DNA of 64,000 bases from Styela clava (lineage: Eukaryota). Made by a program: the position numbers and the translations under genes. This document shows positions 10,201 to 23,386 of the stretch, in pieces. Each line of letters starts with the position of its first letter. The stretch's first letter is position 1. The DNA lies in NCBI RefSeq assembly GCF_964204865.1, contig NC_135260.1:11098001-11162000 (forward strand), read 5' to 3'. The notes under the pieces were generated by a model, which made no database searches, was not told the origin of the DNA, and was given only the letters and a program-made list of their open reading frames with translations.

Positions 10201-10743
10201 CATGAAGGGTGGGGGGGGGGGGGGGGGGGGGCATAGACAATTTTATGAGGGAGCGTGAAGCTAATTAAAAATAATGATCCTGCCGATCTTATTGTGGATG
10301 TGTACATTTTTTATTTTGGACATTTATGTTCAATCTATGTATTTTCAATGTGTTTTTGAATAAATCATACTTTTGGCTTACTATCTGGTATTTGTAATTT
10401 GCTTATTGTTAGCTACTGTAGTTATTTTGGAGGTGGGGCGCGAGACTTGACGAATTTTAAAAAAGGGGCGCGGCTTAAAAAGTTTGAGAACCACTGGTCT
10501 AAGAAAATGACATAATTTGATTGTATTCTCTCGAAATGTTTAAGTTTTGAAATACTACATTCTTTTTGTTGAGTATACATACAGTAGGATCACAACCTTT
10601 AGTTTTTAGCAGAACTTGGCATTTGAAATTAAATATGAAATAACATAAGTAAAGGATTTAGTAATTAACAAAATTATAGTGAATATGCTAAAAATTAAAA
10701 GGCAGAGTGCTTACATGGAATATGTCCTGTCATCTTCTTTCAT
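1296..10743 (-). CDS. NUP188: Nucleoporin Nup188, 5' part (15 exons visible; gene continues past the left edge)
   Basis: Manually spliced GT-AG exons keep frame: 10715-10743, 9915-10043, 9749-9833, 9360-9511, 8834-8900, 7950-8078, 6946-7072, 6323-6453, 5655-5801, 4867-4983, 3901-4047, 3470-3604, 2598-2727, 2134-2258, 1296-1486. Peptides ELWRITVGRS..LKYYK, EQCELLEILFMYYSHFEMAP, LILIEGFDME, SPVLLAWA, GYFPLHLSPMMKLL and KVPMGTVG match recalled vertebrate Nup188 in order. Confidence 0.93.
7620..7854. mobile_element. GG-terminal foldback MITE, family A copy 1
   Basis: About 70-bp TIRs (GGTGCTCCCGAAGTATGCGAACCAAGATGGCGGAC...GGTTAGGGTTAGGC); 8-bp TSD cgtaattc/tgtaattc; near-identical copy at 50438. 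Confidence 0.88.
10193..10496. mobile_element. hAT (Charlie-like) MITE with an internal poly-G tract
   Basis: CAGTGGTTC...GAACCACTG termini; TSD gtctagga/gtctaaga. Confidence 0.8.
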
Positions 10744-11308
10744 GATTTAGCAGATTGAACCAAGCAGGGTTCAATATATATCAGTCTTATAAATACTAGA
10801 GAAGACTAAATTGAAAATAAATATAAATGGACTATTTGCAGAAAATTGTGGAAAAGTAAAAACATGAAAAATATTGCAAACACACGAGGCAAAATTGTAG
10901 CAGCAAAAAGTTTAGAGGGAGCAGCCAATTATTTCAGCGCAACAAAAAATATCTGAAGTTACGGTACTCCATTTACTCAAAGGACTAATTATAAAGGGAC
11001 AGTATCCAAAAATTCAACTTCATCCATGAAGCGCTTCTCAAAGCAACTTTCAATTTGGTATGATGCAAATACCATTTATCAATACGAAAAGCATCATTCC
11101 TTTGCTGTCAATACCATACATACTTTGCTTTCTGCATAAAATTCTCTCTTTATTTTTGAAAACCTTGGCTTAGTTGATCACATAAATTAGTGTTGTAACC
11201 TTCCTATCACAGTAAAAGTATTAAATGATTTGTATCAAGCATTATGTACTATAAAATTTTATGATCATCAGCACAGAATAAATGTCTTTAAGAGTTTTTT
11301 TCACTGTA

Positions 11309-12571
11309 TCAAGAGTCATTATTCTCCTGTTTTATCTCGTTTTCAATATGGTCAAGAAGATCTTCGTTTGGAACATCGGTGATATACATTCCTTCCTCTA
11401 AACATCTTACAACATTCTTTGGAATTCTTATGGGAAGAGAAAAGAAATCCCTACAGGATTGTCTGTCATAACAACGCTGAATGATAACTCTTTGATCAAG
11501 ATATGCCAGATAATAAACATTGTTACTTTTGTGTTGCCTACCGATATTCCGACAATATCGATTCCCCCTAATGCTATATTTTACTGTGTTTTCCTCTGCA
11601 TCGTATTCTATACTACCAATATGACCAGGAGTATCGTTCGTTTGAATAAGTGATTTAACATAATCATTGAGTTCTAGACAATCAAAATCGGAGTAAAAAC
11701 TATCATGTGTAAAAGATGGAACACGCCCACTGGAGATTGGAACATTAGGAGTTCGTTTTTTGATTTCAAAAGGTATAAGATAAATATCTGTATCATCAAC
11801 ATTGCATATAAGTGAAGCATAGAATATGGATTTATTGTTGCCACATTGAGATAATTCAGGCCCAAAAATTTTGTTCGACTGAGCCATTTCTTGTGATAGT
11901 GGAACATGGAGAGTGTCGAATTCAAATTTACAATGATCTGATCTCAGTAACAAAGCTTCTTTCCCTTTTTTGCAAGACTGAAACAATCGGAAGTGACGAT
12001 TTTTTGTATAGACCGCTTTGTCCACAATGAGTTTATCTTGCCCTCCTGAATGTATCGTTAGTCTGTGTCGAAATTCAGGATTTTCACACAATTCTTCAAC
12101 AAAATCGCCGACTTCAAAATTAGATCGGAATGCAATACCTGGTATTCTGAAGATCAAATGTTGACTAAATTTTTCACTTGTACTCGAATCTAATCGTAAT
12201 ACATTCCATTCTGAACATACAATTCCAAAATCAGACTCCAATTTGTTGCAAGAAAAACAGATCAGATCATCAACAATTTTATTAGCATCAACTTCAGTAT
12301 TACTTTCTTTTAAAAACTCGAGGTCAAAATAAAGATGGCACGGTTTGTTTTCACGTATTACTTCATAAAAATGTCGAGGCCAATTATTTTTCATCATTTT
12401 CTGATATTCCCACCAGAATTTTTCGTAAGTGCAAGCAATGAATTTTCTTCCTGAGCGATTGTTTTGAAGTGAAATAACAGGTTCGACTGCAAATATATGA
12501 ATGTTTGGATCGTCTCCAGCTTCGGTAAAAGCATCATCTTGTTTGTGGTGAATATTCCAAGGTTTTTCCAT
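11309..12571 (-). CDS. PRIMPOL: PrimPol paralogue 2 (AEP primase-polymerase), intronless, N-terminally shortened
   Basis: Motif I HLYFDLE, motif II KFSQHL, motif III VDKAVYTKNRHFRL and the UL52-type Zn finger RYC..RQHKSNN..QRC..C are all present. First ATG is at 12571; the ORF track starts at a GTG at 12580, and an in-frame TGA lies just upstream. Confidence 0.88.
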   Translation of the reverse strand: MEKPWNIHHKQDDAFTEAGDDPNIHIFAVEPVISLQNNRSGRKFIACTYEKFWWEYQKMMKNNWPRHFYEVIRENKPCHLYFDLEFLKESNTEVDANKIVDDLICFSCNKLESDFGIVCSEWNVLRLDSSTSEKFSQHLIFRIPGIAFRSNFEVGDFVEELCENPEFRHRLTIHSGGQDKLIVDKAVYTKNRHFRLFQSCKKGKEALLLRSDHCKFEFDTLHVPLSQEMAQSNKIFGPELSQCGNNKSIFYASLICNVDDTDIYLIPFEIKKRTPNVPISSGRVPSFTHDSFYSDFDCLELNDYVKSLIQTNDTPGHIGSIEYDAEENTVKYSIRGNRYCRNIGRQHKSNNVYYLAYLDQRVIIQRCYDRQSCRDFFSLPIRIPKNVVRCLEEGMYITDVPNEDLLDHIENEIKQENNDS

Positions 12572-12936
12572 AAGGATCACACAAATAAATCAGTTTAAAT
12601 CTCAATAAAATGAATCCATATAAGCATTATCACAATTACATTCAATCTATAGCATAAATGGAAAAACTAAAAATGTTTAAAAGAAGAAATAGAACAAACA
12701 AACACTTTTATAATGCACCCAAAACACTTGAACATTAAAAGAGTTGGTTATAGCCAATTTCAGAATTATAAAGCACTTCCTCTCAGCCAGGGATAAGTTG
12801 AGGTAAGTTAGAAATACAGTTAAGGCCCAAAGCATTGCATGTAGGAAATATGTGAAACAGATTTTAAAAATTAGTTGGCCTTCTAAAAAAGTTATAAACA
12901 TTAGTATAGTACAAGAAAGAACGTGACTTGAGCAGA

Positions 12937-14427
12937 TTATGTTTTGTTCTCTATTGCGTTCAATAAATCATCATCGGTAACATTTCCCCAATCATCCTCA
13001 TTTTCACTTTCTGAAATTTTACAATAATTTTCACTCTTATTATTATCACTAGTATCTTTTTCAAGTAAGTTAACATAATCTAGCAATTCTTCATCAGTTA
13101 CATCAAGACCAATATCAACAATATTGTTTGAAACTTCTTTAGGAAAAGGTATCGGAGAAGATTGGTATCCTTGTGATCTACAAACAGGATCAAGGCATTT
13201 CTGGTAACAAACTTTAGAATTTAGATCAGCAACATAATAAATATGATTGCTTTTGTGTTGCCGATTAATATTATTACAAAATCGATTTCCAGAAATATTG
13301 TATATTATAGTATTACTACAAGGAAAGAAGGTCCACTTGTTAACACAGCCTTTTGTATCATTTGAATTTACAATAGAATTTATGAAATCTTTCAACGAAG
13401 GAAATGGAGATTCAAAGCTATCAGTATGAGGAACATTATCGCTAGAAAGTATCGTGTTTAATTCATTTTCTTTTTTTATTCTTGGAGGCATGTCTACTGA
13501 AAGAATTTTAATATTTGAATGGAATTTTACGTTCGACACTAGGGAAGCATAGAACACAAGTTCATTGATGTCCTTTTCTGTCGATTTGTATCGTTTCACT
13601 GGAGGAATATTTTCCTTTTCTTGAGCATGGTGCCTACAACAAGCAGCTCTTACGTTTCCAAAAGACAAATCGAAATTACAAGTTTCTGATTTCTTTAGGG
13701 CAGTAGATTTACCCTTTTTTGTAGACTGAAACAAACGGAAATTTCTATTTCTTGTATATACGCTTTGATCAATAAATGACACAGCTTCACCGTTTGATGT
13801 TAGTACTGTAAATTTATTTCCACTGTTATTGCATATGTTTTGGACAAAACCCCCAACTTCATAGTTGTTTCTAAAAACTGCATTCGGAATGTGAAAAATA
13901 AGATGACGACTAAATTTAACATCATTCGATGAATCAAGTTCAAGAACATGTTTTCTATCACACTTTATTTTGAAATCTTCAAATAACTGTTGGCAAACAG
14001 AATTGATGACTTCGTCAACTAAATCTCCACCATTTATAGATTGATTAAAATTTTTATGATATTCCAAATCAAAGTACAGATGGCATGCGGCATTTTCTTC
14101 AATTACTTCATAAAAATGTTTGTCGCTGTTTTTCATTCTTGAATAATAGAACCAGAATTCTTCGTAACTTGACACAATGAATTCTCTTTTTCCTGATGAT
14201 ACATTGTCAGATTTTGGTTCAACTGCAAAAACCCTCAATTCTTCAGACTTAGCGTGAGCATGACGAAAAGCCTCCTTCAATCGAAAATATTTCGACCATG
14301 TGGGTGGAGGACATGGCAAGTCAGACAACCTCGGCGCATAAAACTTGTGAATGGGGTTCTCTGTGTATTTTTCAGCCAAACGTTCAACTCTTCTTTGAAA
14401 TCTCAAAAACTTTTTCTCGCACGCCAT
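12937..14427 (-). CDS. PRIMPOL: PrimPol paralogue 1, full length, 496 aa, intronless
   Basis: N-terminal helix plus YAPRLS, EFWFYY, HFYEVI, HLYFDLE, KFSRHL, FIDQSVYTRNRNFRL, Zn finger RFC..RQHKSNH..YQKCLDPVC, and an acidic C-tail with two RPA-binding-like motifs. Confidence 0.95.
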   Translation of the reverse strand: MACEKKFLRFQRRVERLAEKYTENPIHKFYAPRLSDLPCPPPTWSKYFRLKEAFRHAHAKSEELRVFAVEPKSDNVSSGKREFIVSSYEEFWFYYSRMKNSDKHFYEVIEENAACHLYFDLEYHKNFNQSINGGDLVDEVINSVCQQLFEDFKIKCDRKHVLELDSSNDVKFSRHLIFHIPNAVFRNNYEVGGFVQNICNNSGNKFTVLTSNGEAVSFIDQSVYTRNRNFRLFQSTKKGKSTALKKSETCNFDLSFGNVRAACCRHHAQEKENIPPVKRYKSTEKDINELVFYASLVSNVKFHSNIKILSVDMPPRIKKENELNTILSSDNVPHTDSFESPFPSLKDFINSIVNSNDTKGCVNKWTFFPCSNTIIYNISGNRFCNNINRQHKSNHIYYVADLNSKVCYQKCLDPVCRSQGYQSSPIPFPKEVSNNIVDIGLDVTDEELLDYVNLLEKDTSDNNKSENYCKISESENEDDWGNVTDDDLLNAIENKT

Positions 14428-14606
14428 CTTAATAACAATTAGTTTACAAAAACGAAATAAATTTAACCATTGAATTTTCTGAAATTAATTCAAAAAATAT
14501 TTTCCGTGTTTTTAAATTACCGTTTCTCAAATACAACCAACTTCATGGAACATTACCTTCAATTTTCATGAAGAAAATAAATAACAGGATTCCTATCTCA
14601 CATATG

Positions 14607-15665
14607 CTATCTCTTAACAAACTTGAACCGTGACAAGATATCTTGATATGGCGTTTTTGAATAATTTACTGGCATTGGCATACGCATCAATTTTTTAAAT
14701 TTGGGGGATTGCATTACCAAAGCTTGTGTGACACCAAAACCACTGGAAATAAACCAATAAAACACCACACCTGATGGCATGTAGATGGCTACTGGTATCA
14801 TAACCACAGAAATGCCCCGCAAAAAATTTATCAAATACTTGGATATACCTTCTAAAGGTGTTTTACCATCACCCCTATGTATTTCAATAGTCGCAAGGTT
14901 GGCAAATGCCATTAAAACAGGCAAGACAAAATATGGATCCGCAAGACATAAGTTATTGAACCATAAAACGCCTTCTTGACTTAATTCAGTATATGTTTGT
15001 ACTTGTGTAGCTGATACACTTGTAGTAAATGGTAAAGATAGAGTCATATTTCTGAGTGAAGCAGTCATAGCAAACCATATTGGAAGTTGTACCCAAGGTA
15101 CTAAATTTCTTCTCAAAGTACCAGGAACTTTATGCTTCTGATACAATTCCTTTTTCCTTTTATGGAAGCTGTTAAAAACATGCATGTCTCGAGTTTTTTT
15201 GTCCCATCTATGTTCTTTACCAGCTTCAACCGCCTCTTCATTCAATTGTTTTATAATTTGTTGCAAAACTGGAGCCAGTAGTTTATGTTTCAAATTTTTC
15301 TGCATTTGCCATATAAACAAAGGGGCTGTGATTGTCAGTCTCAATGACAGAGTACAAATAACAATAGAGACCCACCAAGGAAGACCAGTTAAGTCATGTA
15401 CTGTAGTCAAGTATGATTCCGCCATCTTGACTAAACCACTGTCAACAAAGGAACTATAGATAGATTCCCATGTAGTGGGTTCATAATACTTCCCATAATC
15501 AGCAGCATAATCCAATGTCTCTGGTGGGTTTGATTGTGAAGATGAGACAAATTGAGTTGTGTGGTATCCAGATCTATTTGATTGCCAAAACCGTCTGTAA
15601 TGAATTACATGGTGTGGGTTTGAAGCGATTCTTTTAACTGCAACATTAATTAACAAATGCTTCAT
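14607..15665 (-). CDS. COX18: Cytochrome c oxidase assembly protein COX18 (Oxa1/YidC family), intronless CDS
   Basis: Basic mitochondrial-targeting-like N-terminus; HDLTGLPWWVSIV, WVQLPIWFAMTASLRNM, GVLWFNNLCLADPYFVLP, YWFISS. It lacks the long C-terminal ribosome-binding tail of OXA1L. Confidence 0.88.
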   Translation of the reverse strand: MKHLLINVAVKRIASNPHHVIHYRRFWQSNRSGYHTTQFVSSSQSNPPETLDYAADYGKYYEPTTWESIYSSFVDSGLVKMAESYLTTVHDLTGLPWWVSIVICTLSLRLTITAPLFIWQMQKNLKHKLLAPVLQQIIKQLNEEAVEAGKEHRWDKKTRDMHVFNSFHKRKKELYQKHKVPGTLRRNLVPWVQLPIWFAMTASLRNMTLSLPFTTSVSATQVQTYTELSQEGVLWFNNLCLADPYFVLPVLMAFANLATIEIHRGDGKTPLEGISKYLINFLRGISVVMIPVAIYMPSGVVFYWFISSGFGVTQALVMQSPKFKKLMRMPMPVNYSKTPYQDILSRFKFVKR

Positions 15666-16874
15666 TCTATTATTACTAAATTACTATACTCAAAACATTA
15701 CACTAATTCCTGAAAAAAAAAATACAAAATACATATTTAAAGGCAGTGTGAAATAAACTTTTCCTAAATGCCCAATTATCTTACTTGTATTCTAGTTCAG
15801 CTTCGAAAGTTTCCAAGACTTATAGCAACCAACACAATTACCTTAACCCATTACAACGGTAATATCTGTATTCTGTACTCAGGAAATCAATGTTGCAGAA
15901 ATTCAGTCAAAAGTTAATTAAATGCCATTCCATAAATTCAAAAATCAATCAATAACTCAAGAACAAAAACTATGAATCCCAACAAAATAATTGTCTTAAT
16001 TTGGCAACAGAAATGTTTAATCATGGGTTTACCGTAATGAAAGAGCAGTTCTGAAAGAAAAATATTTAGCTGCACTGCTTTTATTTATAAGCTATCTTTA
16101 TGCATCCACAATTATATGGCATATCAATTTTGCAATGATTGGATCTTATTTTCATAACACCTCTTTAACCCCTTCAAATGAAAAGACATTTTGAATTCAC
16201 ATTTACATTCTGTACATACATGTATTTCCAGTATGATGAAAAAACGAACTACCAATTATTAACTCAATGATATACCTCATGATGAATGTCTATTGAAAAT
16301 ACAGGACTTTCAGCAAAATTTGACTCATAAGTTTATATTCACTGCAGTCATAGGCCAAGTGCATGTTTAGGCTTTAAAAACGTAAGTCAATGTGCTTTAA
16401 TAATAATTGATTTGATTCAAAATAGCCAGAAGAAATACTTTTGTAATAGAATTTGTAAGAAAGTTATAGATATGATCTGCAGCACTAAAATCTGTGGCAT
16501 AAATTGAATTGTGTTTATATTATGCAGTAGTAAGTAGTCCACAGTCTTGTTGTCATGCCCACCACAATATTTCCTGTTTCTTATTTGGTCCACAAACACA
16601 AACATCAGTGAAAAAGGAAAATTGACAAGATTTCATTGCATTGCATGATTCTAAAACAGAACATTAGATGTAGTTCAAAGTATTCACCCACTCAGTTTAT
16701 CTAGTTAGCACAAAATGTTTGACAAGTATTAGAGCTGTAACAATTTCAAAATTTGTTTCTGAGATGTAAGAATGGATAAAAGTATATAAATCGGCTGATA
16801 CTTTCCAATTTATTAAGCTTGTACACTTTTATCAATTTATCACAACAATTTTATTTTTCATTCAATTCCATACA

Positions 16875-18137
16875 TCAAGGGCATTTTCTCTCTACACTAG
16901 ATTTTCCAGCTTCTTCGTATTCTTGTTTTGAAATCCACATTTGCTGAAATGTTCCTAAAGAAGCTAAAATAGATCCACCGATCCAAGGTGAAAACTTACG
17001 TTCAATAGAATTTGTAGGAGCAATAATTTTTAATTTGGCACTTGGTGGTGTTTTGTTTGACAACTCAGCTGTGAGCCTGTCAGTAAAACCTTGAACTAAA
17101 GTATTACCACCAGTTACAATTACACTACTGTAAAGTCCAAGTCGAATATCGACATCACATAATCCTACTGAAGATGATACAACGTGAGGAACGCCAAGCA
17201 TAGAATTTCCTTGGATAAGTGATGGATCAAAAAGAGCTTCTGCAGCTTTCATACGCTCATGGCCAAAGTCTTGATGATATCCATTTGGGAAGCCATAGTG
17301 ACATTGAGGCATTCCCATAGCATCTTGCTCAATGTAAGGTGTGTCTAGGAGTTGTAAAACTGATGCAGCAAAGTCCTCAAGAGTGTAATTCATCATGTAC
17401 TTCTTCCATGATTCTGTAACTTCTGGAAGATCTTTTTTCTTTTCCCAATCTGGTTGACCTCCTTCTTTGGCTTCTTTTTTTGAAGCGATCATGTATGCAG
17501 GGATTACATCAATGTTTAAATTTTTCATTACTTCTCTACATTGCATAAGGATGAAATCGCCACCGAGCGGAGATTTTACGATTCCTTGTTTGAGAACATA
17601 TCCATCGTGTACTGGTACAGCAGTTGTGTGGGTAGAACCGCTATCCAAAACAACCCCAGTTGATCGCCCATTAGCAAATGCTGACAAAACAGGGGATTTG
17701 CAAAGAAAAAAGGCAGGTACATTATATTTCTCAAACATTACTTCCGTTAGTTTTTCTCGCTTGTTTCTTGCATTCCAAGCTGGTTCGGAAAATAACACAG
17801 GATGTAAGTTAGATTCGCTATGCAAGCCACGTTTGTAAGTATAGTCCAACATAGATTCAAATAAATCCCAATCTTCTATCATTCCATCGAGAACGGGTGT
17901 GACAATTTCAGTATCTTTCCTTGGAGTCAACAAAGCACTTGTACCAAAATGCAACTTCTTTGTTGGCTTGGATTCTTCTCCTTCAACTTCCATTTCTTCT
18001 ATTGCTTGGGATCCAACATGAGTAGGAAACACTGATTTGGGACAATCTTCTCCTGCATACCCAGCACGGACAGAATGTGATCCAATATCAATGACCAATG
18101 CACCGACTTCATCTCCACCATATATACCCCCACTCAT
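16875..18137 (-). CDS. ACTL6A: Actin-like protein 6 (BAF53/Arp4), likely pro-orthologue of ACTL6A/B, intronless
   Basis: [20 protein letters not shown]...AFANGRSTG...KSPLGGDF...[31 protein letters not shown] are diagnostic for ACTL6. Confidence 0.96.
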
Positions 18138-22426: not shown

Positions 22427-23386
22427 ATGGAGCAGATGACATTACGTGGTACCCTTAAGGGTCACAATGGATGGGTGACTCAAATCGCAACTACTCCGGC
22501 TTATCCAGACATGGTTTTATCATCATCTCGGGATAGAAGTATTATATTATGGAAATTAACAAGAGAGGAGGGAAGATATGGTGTACCACAGAGAAGAATG
22601 ACTGGTCATTCCCACTTTGTTTCTGATATCGTTATCTCATCAGATGGCCAATTCGCTCTTTCTGGATCTTGGGACGGCGAGTTAAGATTGTGGGATCTCA
22701 CTTTGGGAGTTAGCACTCGTCGCTTTTGTGGACATACTAAAGATGTCCTATCTGTTGCATTTTCCACTGATAACAGGCAAATTGTATCTGCCTCTCGGGA
22801 TCGCACAATTAAGTTGTGGAATACACTTGGTGTGTGCAAATACACCATAATGGATGATGGACATTCTGATTGGGTCTCCTGCGTCAGATTCTCACCAAAT
22901 TCAGGCAACCCCGTTATCGTGTCATGTGGATGGGATAAGATGGTTAAAGTTTGGAATTTAACTAATTGCAAACTGAAGACCAACCATTATGGCCACACTG
23001 CATTCTGCAATGGCGTTACCGTTTCACCTGATGGATCTCTCTGTGCTTCTGGTGGAAAAGATGGACAAGCTATGCTCTGGGATCTCAACGAAGGAAAACA
23101 TCTTTATACTCTAAATGGCGATGGTGAAATTCATGCAATGGCTTTCTCACCAAACCGATATTGGCTTGCTGCAGCATGTGGACCTTGCGTCAAAATCTGG
23201 GATTTGGAAGGAAAGGTTATCGTTGACGAGCTGAAACCAGAGCTTATCAACATGCCAAACAGCAAAGCTGATCCACCAGAATGTCTTTCACTCGCTTGGT
23301 CCTCCGATGGTCAAACCCTTTTTGCTGGTTATGCCGATAACTTGATAAGAGTTTGGCAAGTATCTGTACCAGCACATATTAGTTAG
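22427..23386 (+). CDS. RACK1: Receptor for activated C kinase 1 (40S-associated WD40 protein), intronless CDS
   Basis: [23 protein letters not shown]...GHSHFVSD...[14 protein letters not shown]...FSPNRYWL; seven WD repeats. ATTAAA at 23473. Confidence 0.98.

What the first reader, a model, noticed from the sequence alone, without database searches (positions are those of the whole stretch)
11309..14427. Tandem pair of diverged PrimPol paralogues, both with intact catalytic motifs
Seen: two adjacent intronless PrimPol ORFs that are strongly diverged, yet both keep DxE, SxH, the motif III Asp, the Y100-equivalent sugar selector (HFYEVI) and all four Zn-finger ligands. Known: PrimPol is single-copy in well-studied animals. 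Inference: an old duplication kept by selection, giving a two-enzyme repriming system, for example nuclear vs mitochondrial or primase vs translesion specialisation.
Basis: partly seen in the sequence, partly recalled or inferred. Interest (0 to 1): 0.8.

Follow-up and report, generated by a model that had tools for sequence, protein, structure and literature searches.

The report
Two tandem PrimPol genes in Styela
A sea squirt (Styela clava or a very close relative) carries two neighbouring, single-exon copies of the DNA-repriming enzyme PrimPol; both look functional and transcribed, and the second is a fast-evolving version without the N-terminal DNA-gripping helix, which makes this a modest lineage-specific gene duplication and not a new kind of system.

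Summary
Two head-to-tail, single-exon minus-strand ORFs are 40% identical: copy 1 at 12937-14427 (496 aa) and copy 2 at 11309-12571 (420 aa). Both are true PrimPols by match to human PrimPol structures, UL52 zinc finger and, for copy 2, predicted fold. They are the only PrimPol loci in this 377-Mb genome. RefSeq already annotates both in Styela clava as "PrimPol-like"; I found no paper on them.

Both keep every family-invariant residue. Copy 2 evolved 2-2.7x faster. It lacks the N-terminal ~40 residues (N-helix and linker), has a one-residue deletion in template-contact motif Ib, has Y89E, and keeps one of two C-terminal acidic motifs.

Copy 2 is not decaying:
- The listed polymorphisms are 10 synonymous and 5 non-synonymous (p = 1e-4 against neutrality).
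- Contigs of three RNA-like run sets cover it.

Synonymous sites between the copies are saturated, so the duplication is old. Whether it predates the nearest sampled lineage is unresolved (AU p = 0.06).

A division of labour is plausible but untested, and nothing supports a nuclear versus mitochondrial split. A nematode also has two diverged PrimPols, so this is an ordinary retained duplicate.

This scan had noted the N-helix loss and a candidate operon on this same stretch.

The parts
12937..14427 (-). PrimPol copy 1: single-exon CDS of 496 aa including the stop. This is the canonical, slower-evolving paralogue.
   Evidence: ORF. Human PrimPol 7jk1 E 2.8e-51, aligned from residue 9. 97% identical to S. 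clava XP_039272762.1. Groups with P0002 inside the tunicate clade.
14299..14427 (-). Copy 1 N-terminal 43 residues, equivalent to the human N-helix plus linker. Absent from copy 2.
   Evidence: Aligns with human residues 9-41. All sampled deuterostome PrimPols have at least 39 residues here. Role of the N-helix and Lys10: PMC5088642.
14062..14154 (-). Copy 1 WFYY, HFYEVI and motif I (YFDLE).
13717..13917 (-). Copy 1 motif II (KFSRH) to motif III (D...RNRNFRLFQSTK).
13180..13284 (-). Copy 1 UL52-type zinc finger (R-x-C ... R-x-H ... C-x4-C).
   Evidence: Pfam PF03121, 35.6 bits against a cut-off of 21..
12946..13104 (-). Copy 1 C-terminal tail with two acidic motifs (DVTDEELLDYVNLLE and WGNVTDDDLLNAIEN). 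These are candidate RPA-binding motifs.
   Evidence: The tail lines up with the vertebrate RBM-A/RBM-B region in alignment A2. Motif definitions: PMC10415149. Binding was not tested.
12572..12936 (-). 365-nt spacer between copy 1's stop and copy 2's ATG. It has no N-terminal remnant and no AATAAA or ATTAAA, and RNA-like contigs cover it.
11309..12571 (-). PrimPol copy 2: single-exon CDS of 420 aa including the stop. This is the fast-evolving paralogue without the N-helix.
   Evidence: ORF. Human PrimPol E 4.6e-38, aligned from residue 41. 98% identical to XP_039272767.1. AlphaFold model pLDDT 84.9, with TM 0.79-0.87 (normalised to the target) to 5l2x/7jk1. Relative-rate tests. pN/pS.
12434..12466 (-). 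Copy 2 motif Ib region (QNNRSGRKFIA), with a one-residue deletion relative to copy 1 and other PrimPols.
   Evidence: Gap in BLASTP. The only >=90%-conserved column lost is G at position 40. Role of Gly74/Gln75/Arg76/Tyr78: PMC5088642.
12317..12415 (-). Copy 2 WWEY (W87 and Y90 kept, Y89 changed to E), HFYEVI and motif I (YFDLE).
   Evidence: PMC8373064.
11969..12172 (-). Copy 2 motif II (KFSQH) to motif III (D...KNRHFRLFQSCK, with N289 changed to H).
11453..11560 (-). Copy 2 UL52-type zinc finger. All four ligands and both Arg residues are kept; the last spacing is C-x5-C.
   Evidence: Pfam PF03121, 28.2 bits against a cut-off of 21..
11336..11386 (-). Copy 2's single C-terminal acidic motif (ITDVPNEDLLDHIENE). 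The terminal W..TDDDLL motif of copy 1 is missing.

Best explanation
These are two functional, vertically inherited PrimPol (AEP-superfamily primase-polymerase) genes. They arose by an old tandem duplication in the lineage leading to Styela.

Copy 1 (496 aa) is the canonical enzyme. It has the N-terminal helix and linker, the ModN/ModC catalytic core, the UL52-type zinc finger and two acidic C-terminal motifs.

Copy 2 (420 aa) keeps what chemistry and de novo priming require:
- The metal ligands.
- The dNTP-triphosphate contacts.
- W87/Y90 and the Y100 sugar gate.
- The zinc ligands and the two zinc-finger arginines.

After a phase of 2-2.7x faster change, copy 2 has lost or altered the elements that hold the template strand and recruit partners. 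It has no N-helix (Lys10), a one-residue deletion in motif Ib, Y89E, and only one acidic tail motif.

Shown here: both genes are intact, both are covered by contigs of RNA-like run sets, and copy 2 is under purifying selection today.

Inferred: copy 2 is an active nucleotidyl transferase with a looser or different grip on the template. The pair would then have split PrimPol's jobs, with copy 1 keeping polymerase/translesion extension and copy 2 working mainly in priming or in another context. I put about 0.85 on "two selected, functional paralogues" and about 0.3 on that particular division of labour.

Both genes sit in a same-strand run of single-exon genes whose spacers are covered by RNA-like contigs. 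They may therefore be co-transcribed.
For: Identity and family:
- Human PrimPol structures are hit at E 2.8e-51 and 4.6e-38.
- Pfam UL52 is above cut-off in both.
- The copy 2 model (pLDDT 84.9) superposes on 5l2x/7jk1 with TM 0.79-0.87 and E about 5e-24.

Vertical origin:
- Both fall inside a tunicate PrimPol clade (95/96) within animal PrimPols.
- They share with P0002 a roughly 30-residue deletion relative to other tunicates.
- They are the only two PrimPol loci in the 377-Mb genome.

Real duplication:
- Both are in an independent RefSeq annotation and in DNA-like contigs (X10).

Age:
- 40% amino-acid identity and pS 0.69.
- The topology is copy2+(P0002+copy1) with support 93/81.

Constraint on copy 2:
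- 27 of 27 invariant and 46 of 47 >=90% columns are kept.
- Listed polymorphisms are 10 synonymous and 5 non-synonymous, binomial p = 1e-4.
- There are 7 of 420 amino-acid differences from the RefSeq allele, against 15 of 496 for copy 1.

Asymmetry:
- Tajima relative-rate tests are significant with all 7 outgroups, for example 77 against 33 unique changes.

Transcription:
- Contigs of X1, X5 and X6 (three studies, 55-79 Mb of contigs each) cover copy 2 end to end.
- X5 and X6 contigs leave the genome at a GT donor at 10714/10713, so they are spliced RNA.

Missing N-terminus:
- The RefSeq model starts at the same ATG.
- There is no remnant in the spacer and no joint in the contigs.

Functional meaning of the changed elements: PMC5088642, PMC8373064 and PMC10415149.
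Against: - No enzyme activity, localisation or protein-level evidence exists for either copy.
- The runs laid are contigs whose RNA nature is a guess supported only by one splice junction and by assembly size. Strand, abundance and transcript ends cannot be read from them.
- The polymorphism test uses only the 40 best-supported of 166 variant rows.
- The RefSeq allele of copy 2 has L80P right next to the metal-ligand motif. That could mean tolerated damage, or it could be an error.
- Y89D in the human enzyme has only mild effects (PMC8373064). Asn289 acts through its main chain (PMC5088642). These substitutions therefore may mean little.
- No orthologue of copy 2 was found outside Styela. The AU test does not reject a Styela-only duplication (p = 0.06).
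- Most tunicate PrimPols also have a single acidic tail motif.
Confidence: 0.7

Rival explanations
1. The copies are simply redundant. Both are ordinary, interchangeable PrimPols kept for dosage, or by co-transcription in one unit, and copy 2's differences are neutral drift in dispensable parts.
For: - All catalytic, dNTP-binding and zinc-finger residues are kept in both.
- Y89D is nearly neutral in the human enzyme.
- A single acidic tail motif is usual in tunicates.
- The genes lie 365 nt apart on the same strand with RNA-like contig cover over the spacer.
Against: - The 2-2.7x rate asymmetry is significant with every outgroup.
- Copy 2 lost a 40-residue segment that every other sampled deuterostome PrimPol keeps.
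- It has an indel in the loop that contacts the templating base.
- Long-term retention of a purely redundant copy at saturated dS is unusual.
Confidence: 0.18
2. The split is by compartment. One copy serves the nucleus and the other the mitochondrion.
For: Human PrimPol works in both compartments (abstracts seen). The two copies differ most at the N-terminus, where targeting signals usually sit.
Against: - Copy 2 begins MEKPWNIHHKQDDAF, which is acidic and runs directly into the ModN core.
- Copy 1's N-terminus aligns residue for residue with the DNA-binding N-helix. Neither looks like a presequence.
- No predictor or localisation data were available.
Confidence: 0.07
3. Copy 2 is a decaying or non-enzymatic duplicate: an expressed pseudogene or a regulatory or dominant-negative protein.
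For: - It is the faster-evolving copy.
- It lacks the N-helix.
- The RefSeq allele carries L80P beside motif I.
- No orthologue has been found elsewhere.
Against: - It has an intact 420-codon ORF in 33% GC DNA despite saturated divergence.
- Every invariant family residue is kept.
- pN/pS is about 0.12 on the listed variants.
- The model is confident and PrimPol-like.
- Contigs of RNA-like runs cover it with no frame-breaking indel listed in its CDS.
Confidence: 0.04
4. The genes are not host PrimPol genes. They would be a viral or mobile-element AEP primase insertion, or an assembly artefact such as uncollapsed haplotypes.
For: The genes are intronless. Pfam also reports a weak hit to the ASFV C962R AEP domain. 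Structural neighbours after PrimPol are herpesvirus and poxvirus primases.
Against: - Both nest inside the tunicate branch of animal PrimPols.
- Another tunicate-clade PrimPol (L003) is also single-exon.
- The neighbours are ordinary host genes: actin-family, Oxa1/COX18-like, and a spliced downstream gene.
- The copies are only 54% identical in DNA, so they are not haplotypes.
- Both occur in an independent assembly.
Confidence: 0.01

Closest known systems
Human/vertebrate PrimPol (CCDC111); structures 5L2X and 7JK1
   Same: - The same domain order: AEP core with DxE, SxH and hD motifs, WxxY, the Y100 sugar gate, a UL52-type C-H-C-C zinc finger with the two arginines needed for priming, and an acidic C-terminal tail.
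- Copy 1 aligns from human residue 9.
- The copy 2 model superposes with TM 0.79-0.87 (normalised to the target).
   Different: - There are two genes instead of one, and both are single-exon.
- Both lack most of the disordered 201-260 insert.
- Copy 2 lacks residues 1-40 (N-helix with Lys10, and linker). It has a one-residue deletion in motif Ib, Y89E, R168Q, N289H, C-x5-C zinc spacing and one acidic tail motif.
Trypanosoma brucei PPL1/PPL2 (Rudd et al. 2013, PMC3898837)
   Same: A eukaryote with two PrimPol-like paralogues, both with an AEP core and a CHC2 zinc finger. Their jobs were shown to differ: PPL1 is a primase-polymerase, and PPL2 is a polymerase/TLS enzyme without primase activity and is essential.
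   Different: - The trypanosome pair share only about 10% identity, and PPL2 has DxD instead of DxE.
- The Styela pair are 40% identical, tandem, and both keep DxE and all priming residues.
- No activity data exist for Styela.
Other tunicate PrimPols (Ciona intestinalis P0031, Clavelina lepadiformis P0123, unnamed P0002/P0003)
   Same: They belong to the same clade (95/96 support). The P0003-type gene on metagenome contig L003 is also one uninterrupted ORF. P0002 shares the short motif II-III linker with both Styela copies.
   Different: One sequence per source was seen. None lacks the N-terminal segment. No tandem second copy lies within about 5 kb on L003.
Ditylenchus destructor PrimPol pair (P0177 and P0214)
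   Same: This is another invertebrate with two diverged PrimPols that both keep the catalytic motifs. One of them (P0177) also has a very short N-terminus before the W42-equivalent position.
   Different: The two are 51% identical, lie on different contigs, and belong to a different phylum. It is an independent event.

Membership tests
Eukaryotic PrimPol (AEP superfamily, NCLDV-herpesvirus primase clade) | AEP catalytic motifs I (DxE), II (SxH) and III (hD) | tested here: met
   Both copies have YFDLE, KFS(R/Q)H and the motif III Asp, aligned to human D114/E116, S167/H169 and D280.
Eukaryotic PrimPol (AEP superfamily, NCLDV-herpesvirus primase clade) | C-terminal UL52-type C-H-C-C zinc finger | tested here: met
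   Pfam PF03121 gives 35.6 and 28.2 bits against a cut-off of 21. All four ligands and the R417/R424 equivalents are present. Copy 2 has one extra residue between the last two Cys.
Eukaryotic PrimPol (AEP superfamily, NCLDV-herpesvirus primase clade) | Significant full-length sequence similarity to characterised PrimPol, and placement among animal PrimPols | tested here: met
   phmmer against the PDB gives E 2.8e-51 and 4.6e-38 to human PrimPol. Both sit in the tunicate clade of the tree.
Eukaryotic PrimPol (AEP superfamily, NCLDV-herpesvirus primase clade) | PrimPol catalytic-core fold (ModN + ModC) | tested here: met
   The copy 2 model (pLDDT 84.9) matches 5l2x/7jk1/7jkl with TM 0.79-0.87 (target-normalised), probability 1.0. 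Copy 1 was not modelled.
Eukaryotic PrimPol (AEP superfamily, NCLDV-herpesvirus primase clade) | WxxY motif (W87 and Y90) and Y100 sugar selector | tested here: met
   Copy 1 has WFYY and copy 2 has WWEY. Both have HFYEVI. Motif definition: PMC8373064.
Eukaryotic PrimPol (AEP superfamily, NCLDV-herpesvirus primase clade) | N-terminal helix with the template-contacting Lys10, plus the linker to ModN | tested here: not met
   Met for copy 1 (43 residues aligned to human 9-41). Not met for copy 2: four residues precede the W42 equivalent, there is no remnant upstream and no joint. This feature is typical of animal PrimPols and is not a defining feature of the AEP family.
Eukaryotic PrimPol (AEP superfamily, NCLDV-herpesvirus primase clade) | Acidic RPA-binding motifs in the C-terminal tail | tested here: inconclusive
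   Copy 1 has two acidic D/E-x-x-LL-type motifs and copy 2 has one. They fall in the same alignment region as the vertebrate RBM-A/B. Binding was not tested.
Eukaryotic PrimPol (AEP superfamily, NCLDV-herpesvirus primase clade) | DNA-dependent primase and polymerase/TLS activity | not testable with these tools
   This needs recombinant protein assays.
Tunicate SL-trans-spliced operon (Ciona type) | Same-strand genes abutting with little or no intergenic DNA (operationally under 100 bp between transcript models) | tested here: inconclusive
   CDS-to-CDS spacers are 179 nt (COX18-like to copy 1), 365 nt (copy 1 to copy 2) and 565 nt (copy 2 to the next ATG). UTR ends are unknown. Definition: PMC2760879.
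Tunicate SL-trans-spliced operon (Ciona type) | Polycistronic transcript, with spliced leader added to the downstream genes | tested here: inconclusive
   One X6 contig is colinear from 10714 to 15617 across three genes and carries a spliced junction. X1 contigs bridge COX18-like to copy 1. A contig does not prove a single molecule, and no spliced-leader sequence was seen or searched for.

The most novel reading that the evidence does not exclude
Copy 2 is a naturally N-helix-less PrimPol that has become a dedicated repriming primase, or a PrimPol with a relaxed template cleft. It is co-transcribed in one trans-spliced operon with the canonical enzyme. A chordate would then have split PrimPol's priming and translesion/extension roles between two proteins, giving a natural separation-of-function pair.
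Probability: 0.2. Interest if true: 0.55.

Novelty: new member of a known kind. Interest (0 to 1): 0.3.

Why it matters
PrimPol's two activities, repriming and lesion bypass, are hard to separate in vertebrates, where one protein does both. A natural pair keeps every catalytic and priming residue in both members but drops the template-gripping N-helix and alters motif Ib in one of them. That offers a ready-made comparison for asking what those elements contribute.

Beyond that, this is an ordinary retained tandem duplicate of a well-known enzyme. It is already present as two gene models in RefSeq, and there is at least one independent parallel in a nematode.

Tried and rejected
- Upstream exon for copy 2. 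I translated the 365-nt spacer in three frames and aligned it to copy 1's first 48 residues. The best score was 18, against 22.7 +/- 3.2 for shuffles, so there is no remnant.
- Third or parental intron-bearing copy. A six-frame search of the whole 377-Mb assembly found only the two loci.
- Orthologue of copy 2 elsewhere. The word-indexed search of 5.8 billion clusters gave only the S. clava RefSeq allele (98%), then P0002 at 37%.
I could not see whether that species has a tandem pair or learn its name (one search gave no names).
- Timing of the duplication. The free tree puts P0002 with copy 1 (93/81). The AU test does not reject copy1+copy2 monophyly (p = 0.061), so this is unresolved.
- dN/dS between the paralogues. 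Synonymous sites are saturated (pS 0.69), so only the polymorphism-based test is informative.
- Literature. There is no paper with both PrimPol and Styela, and nothing on animal PrimPol paralogues.
- Viral or transposon origin and haplotype artefact. Both are rejected; see the rival explanations.
- Operators' notes. The downstream gene's exons were not assembled.
Full report
**What is there.** On the minus strand lie two uninterrupted ORFs. Copy 1 is 12937-14427 (496 aa, ATG). Copy 2 is 11309-12580 as a mechanical GTG-ORF, with its first ATG at 12571 (420 aa). They are 40% identical over 422 residues (E 8e-87) and 54% identical in DNA.

Both match human PrimPol chains 7jk1/5l2x (E 2.8e-51 and 4.6e-38). 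Both pass Pfam's cut-off for the UL52-type zinc finger. An AlphaFold2 model of copy 2, built on a 40-sequence alignment, has mean pLDDT 84.9. It superposes on all human PrimPol structures with target-normalised TM 0.79-0.87 and E about 5e-24. Herpesvirus, poxvirus and ASFV primases follow far behind, as expected for this AEP clade.

**Organism and prior annotation.**
- The closest database proteins are Styela clava RefSeq XP_039272762.1 (97%, 496 aa) and XP_039272767.1 (98%, 420 aa). Both are named "DNA-directed primase/polymerase protein-like".
- Identical proteins are also on record from a 22-Mb NCBI contig.
- The window is therefore S. clava or something very close, and both gene models already exist, with the same start for copy 2.
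- A six-frame search of the window's own 377-Mb assembly finds these two loci and no third.
- I found no paper mentioning PrimPol together with Styela, and none on animal PrimPol paralogues.

**Motifs.** I took human numbering from the phmmer alignments and residue roles from three papers: PMC5088642, PMC8373064 and PMC10415149. Both copies keep the following:
- W87 and Y90 of the WxxY motif.
- HFYEVI (Y100).
- D114/E116.
- K165/S167/H169.
- D280.
- R288, F290, R291 and K297.
- C419/H426/C446/C451, plus the priming arginines R417 and R424.

Against 38 other PrimPols from animals, plants, fungi and protists, copy 2 keeps 27 of 27 invariant columns and 46 of 47 columns conserved at 90% or more. 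Copy 1 keeps 27 of 27 and 45 of 47.

**How copy 2 differs.**
- It begins four residues before the W42 equivalent, so it lacks the human 1-40 segment. That segment is the N-helix (1-17, with the template-contacting Lys10) and its linker.
- Every other sampled deuterostome PrimPol has 39-80 residues there.
- The RefSeq model starts at the same ATG.
- The 365-nt spacer holds no recognisable remnant (best score 18 against 22.7 +/- 3.2 for shuffles).
- No joint was seen in RNA-like contigs.
- It has a one-residue deletion in motif Ib (SG-RKF against SGKREF). Motif Ib is the loop whose Gly74/Gln75/Arg76/Tyr78 contact the templating base.
- It carries R47K, Y89E, R168Q and N289H. The literature gives Y89D as mild, and Asn289 acts through its main chain.
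- Its last zinc spacing is C-x5-C.
- It lacks a CCxxH patch present in most tunicate PrimPols.
- It has only the first of copy 1's two acidic C-terminal motifs, which lie in the alignment region of the vertebrate RPA-binding motifs. Most other tunicate PrimPols also have only one such motif.

**Origin and age.**
- In a maximum-likelihood tree (LG+C20 PMSF) both copies fall within a tunicate clade (95/96) among animal PrimPols. This excludes a viral or mobile-element source.
- The topology is copy2 + (P0002 + copy1), with 97/94 for the trio and 93/81 for P0002 + copy 1.
- Copy 2's stem is 2.01 substitutions per site, against 0.68 for copy 1.
- The AU test does not reject copy1+copy2 monophyly (delta lnL 5.0, p = 0.061). 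Whether the duplication predates the split from the unnamed P0002 lineage is therefore unresolved.
- All three share a roughly 30-residue deletion between motifs II and III relative to other tunicates.
- Synonymous sites between the copies are saturated (pS 0.69, dS about 1.9, dN 0.56), so the duplication is old.
- Tajima relative-rate tests with seven outgroups all show copy 2 evolving 1.7-2.8 times faster (p from 0.018 to 6e-6).

**Is copy 2 alive?**
- A 420-codon ORF has been kept in 33% GC DNA over saturated divergence, with every invariant residue retained. That already argues for selection.
- For recent time I classified the variants that read laying listed. These are the 40 best-supported of 166 rows.
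- In copy 2, 10 are synonymous and 5 are non-synonymous, over about 250 synonymous and 1010 non-synonymous sites. That gives pN/pS of about 0.12 and a binomial p = 1e-4 against neutrality.
- The listed part of copy 1 gives 5 synonymous and 6 non-synonymous variants.
- Against the RefSeq alleles, copy 2 differs at 7 of 420 residues and copy 1 at 15 of 496.
- One caveat: the RefSeq allele of copy 2 has L80P directly beside the metal-ligand motif.

**Transcription.**
- Thirteen runs from four studies hold the stretch.
- I laid X1, X5 and X6. These are labelled as a guess at RNA, with 55-79 Mb of contigs each, from three studies. I also laid X10, which is DNA-like at 349 Mb.
- X5 and X6 contigs leave the genome at 10714, where the minus strand reads ...CCATG|GTAAGC just after the next gene's ATG at 10743. 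These are spliced RNA. X10 runs straight through that point.
- Copy 2 is covered end to end in all three RNA-like sets (X1 contig 11004-12778; X5 10829-12724; X6 10714-15617), and so is copy 1.
- Contigs cannot give strand, level or ends, so "transcribed" is likely but not proven.
- No frame-breaking indel is listed in copy 2's CDS. The paired +1/-1 events at 13652-13660 in copy 1 are an in-frame polymorphic patch that matches the RefSeq differences G257K and V259I.

**Context.**
- The pair sits in a same-strand run of single-exon genes: an actin-family gene (16875-18137; Pfam Actin E 2.7e-141), an Oxa1/COX18-like gene (14607-15665), copy 1 and copy 2. A spliced gene follows, starting at 10743.
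- There is no AATAAA or ATTAAA between the COX18-like stop and copy 1's ATG, nor between copy 1's stop and copy 2's ATG. One lies 155 nt after copy 2's stop (11154).
- An AG directly precedes copy 1's ATG.
- The spacers are covered by RNA-like contigs.
- In Ciona, operons are rich in single-exon genes (38% against 15%) but typically have no intergenic DNA (PMC2760879). Co-transcription here is plausible but open.
- Single-exon structure seems to be a tunicate PrimPol trait and not a retrogene mark. A related PrimPol on metagenome contig L003 is also one 596-601-aa ORF, with no second copy within about 5 kb.

**Interpretation.** The best reading is two selected, functional PrimPol paralogues. 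One is a canonical copy. The other is a diverged copy that keeps the chemistry and priming apparatus but has lost or changed the elements that PMC5088642 describes as latching the enzyme onto the template strand.

From that anatomy I infer a changed template grip, and hence some division of labour. This is inference only. Plain redundancy remains a serious rival. Nothing supports a nuclear versus mitochondrial split.

The nearest precedent for a two-PrimPol eukaryote is Trypanosoma brucei PPL1/PPL2, where one paralogue primes and the other does not (PMC3898837). An independent diverged pair exists in the nematode Ditylenchus destructor (51% identity, one with a short N-terminus).

**Verdict.** This is a lineage-specific, already-annotated duplicate of a known enzyme, with one mildly interesting natural variant lacking the N-helix.

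Noticed in passing
window 10714-18137, minus strand: Four single-exon genes lie in a row on one strand: actin-family (16875-18137), Oxa1/COX18-like (14607-15665), PrimPol 1 and PrimPol 2. A spliced gene follows (ATG 10743, donor at 10714/10713). One RNA-like contig (X6) is colinear from 10714 to 15617. No AATAAA or ATTAAA lies in the two spacers upstream of copy 2, but one lies at 11154. An AG sits directly before copy 1's ATG. This is a candidate trans-spliced operon, but the spacers (179-565 nt) are longer than in Ciona operons.
   Followed up: partly
window 12937: A 21-nt insertion polymorphism (TATGTTTCACAAACATGTGAC on the + strand) lies right at copy 1's stop codon in X1, X6 and X10, together with T>C at 12937. 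The stop is preserved as TAG, so only the start of the 3' UTR changes.
   Followed up: partly
copy 2 codon 80 (window 12332-12334): The S. clava RefSeq allele (XP_039272767.1) has Pro instead of Leu in CH(L/P)YFDLEF, immediately beside the metal-ligand motif. It could be a damaging allele or an error. It was not among the 40 variant rows shown.
   Followed up: no
proteins P0177 and P0214 (Ditylenchus destructor): This nematode encodes two PrimPols that are 51% identical, on different contigs. Both have the catalytic motifs. P0177 has only 12 residues before the W42-equivalent position. This parallels the Styela pair.
   Followed up: partly
alignment A1, columns about 243-275: Copy 1, copy 2 and P0002 share a deletion of roughly 30 residues between motifs II and III, compared with Ciona, Clavelina and the other tunicate PrimPols. 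The shared indel supports their common clade.
   Followed up: partly
L003 4845-6650 (JGI metagenome contig JGI24021J15306_10010014): A tunicate-clade PrimPol is encoded as a single 596-601-aa ORF with three or more acidic tail repeats. No second PrimPol and no long COX18-like ORF were seen on the 11.7-kb contig.
   Followed up: partly
proteins P0122, P0124, P0125, P0126, P0005: Several other tunicate PrimPols carry a 30-40-residue N-terminal extension before the N-helix, for example MLQLLKKLNLFSTPRYSSRSSGYKF in P0126. It could be a targeting peptide. Neither Styela copy has it.
   Followed up: no
window 22427-23386, plus strand: An intronless 319-aa WD40 beta-propeller ORF (Pfam WD40 E 1e-59) lies in a locally GC-richer stretch (0.40).
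   Followed up: no
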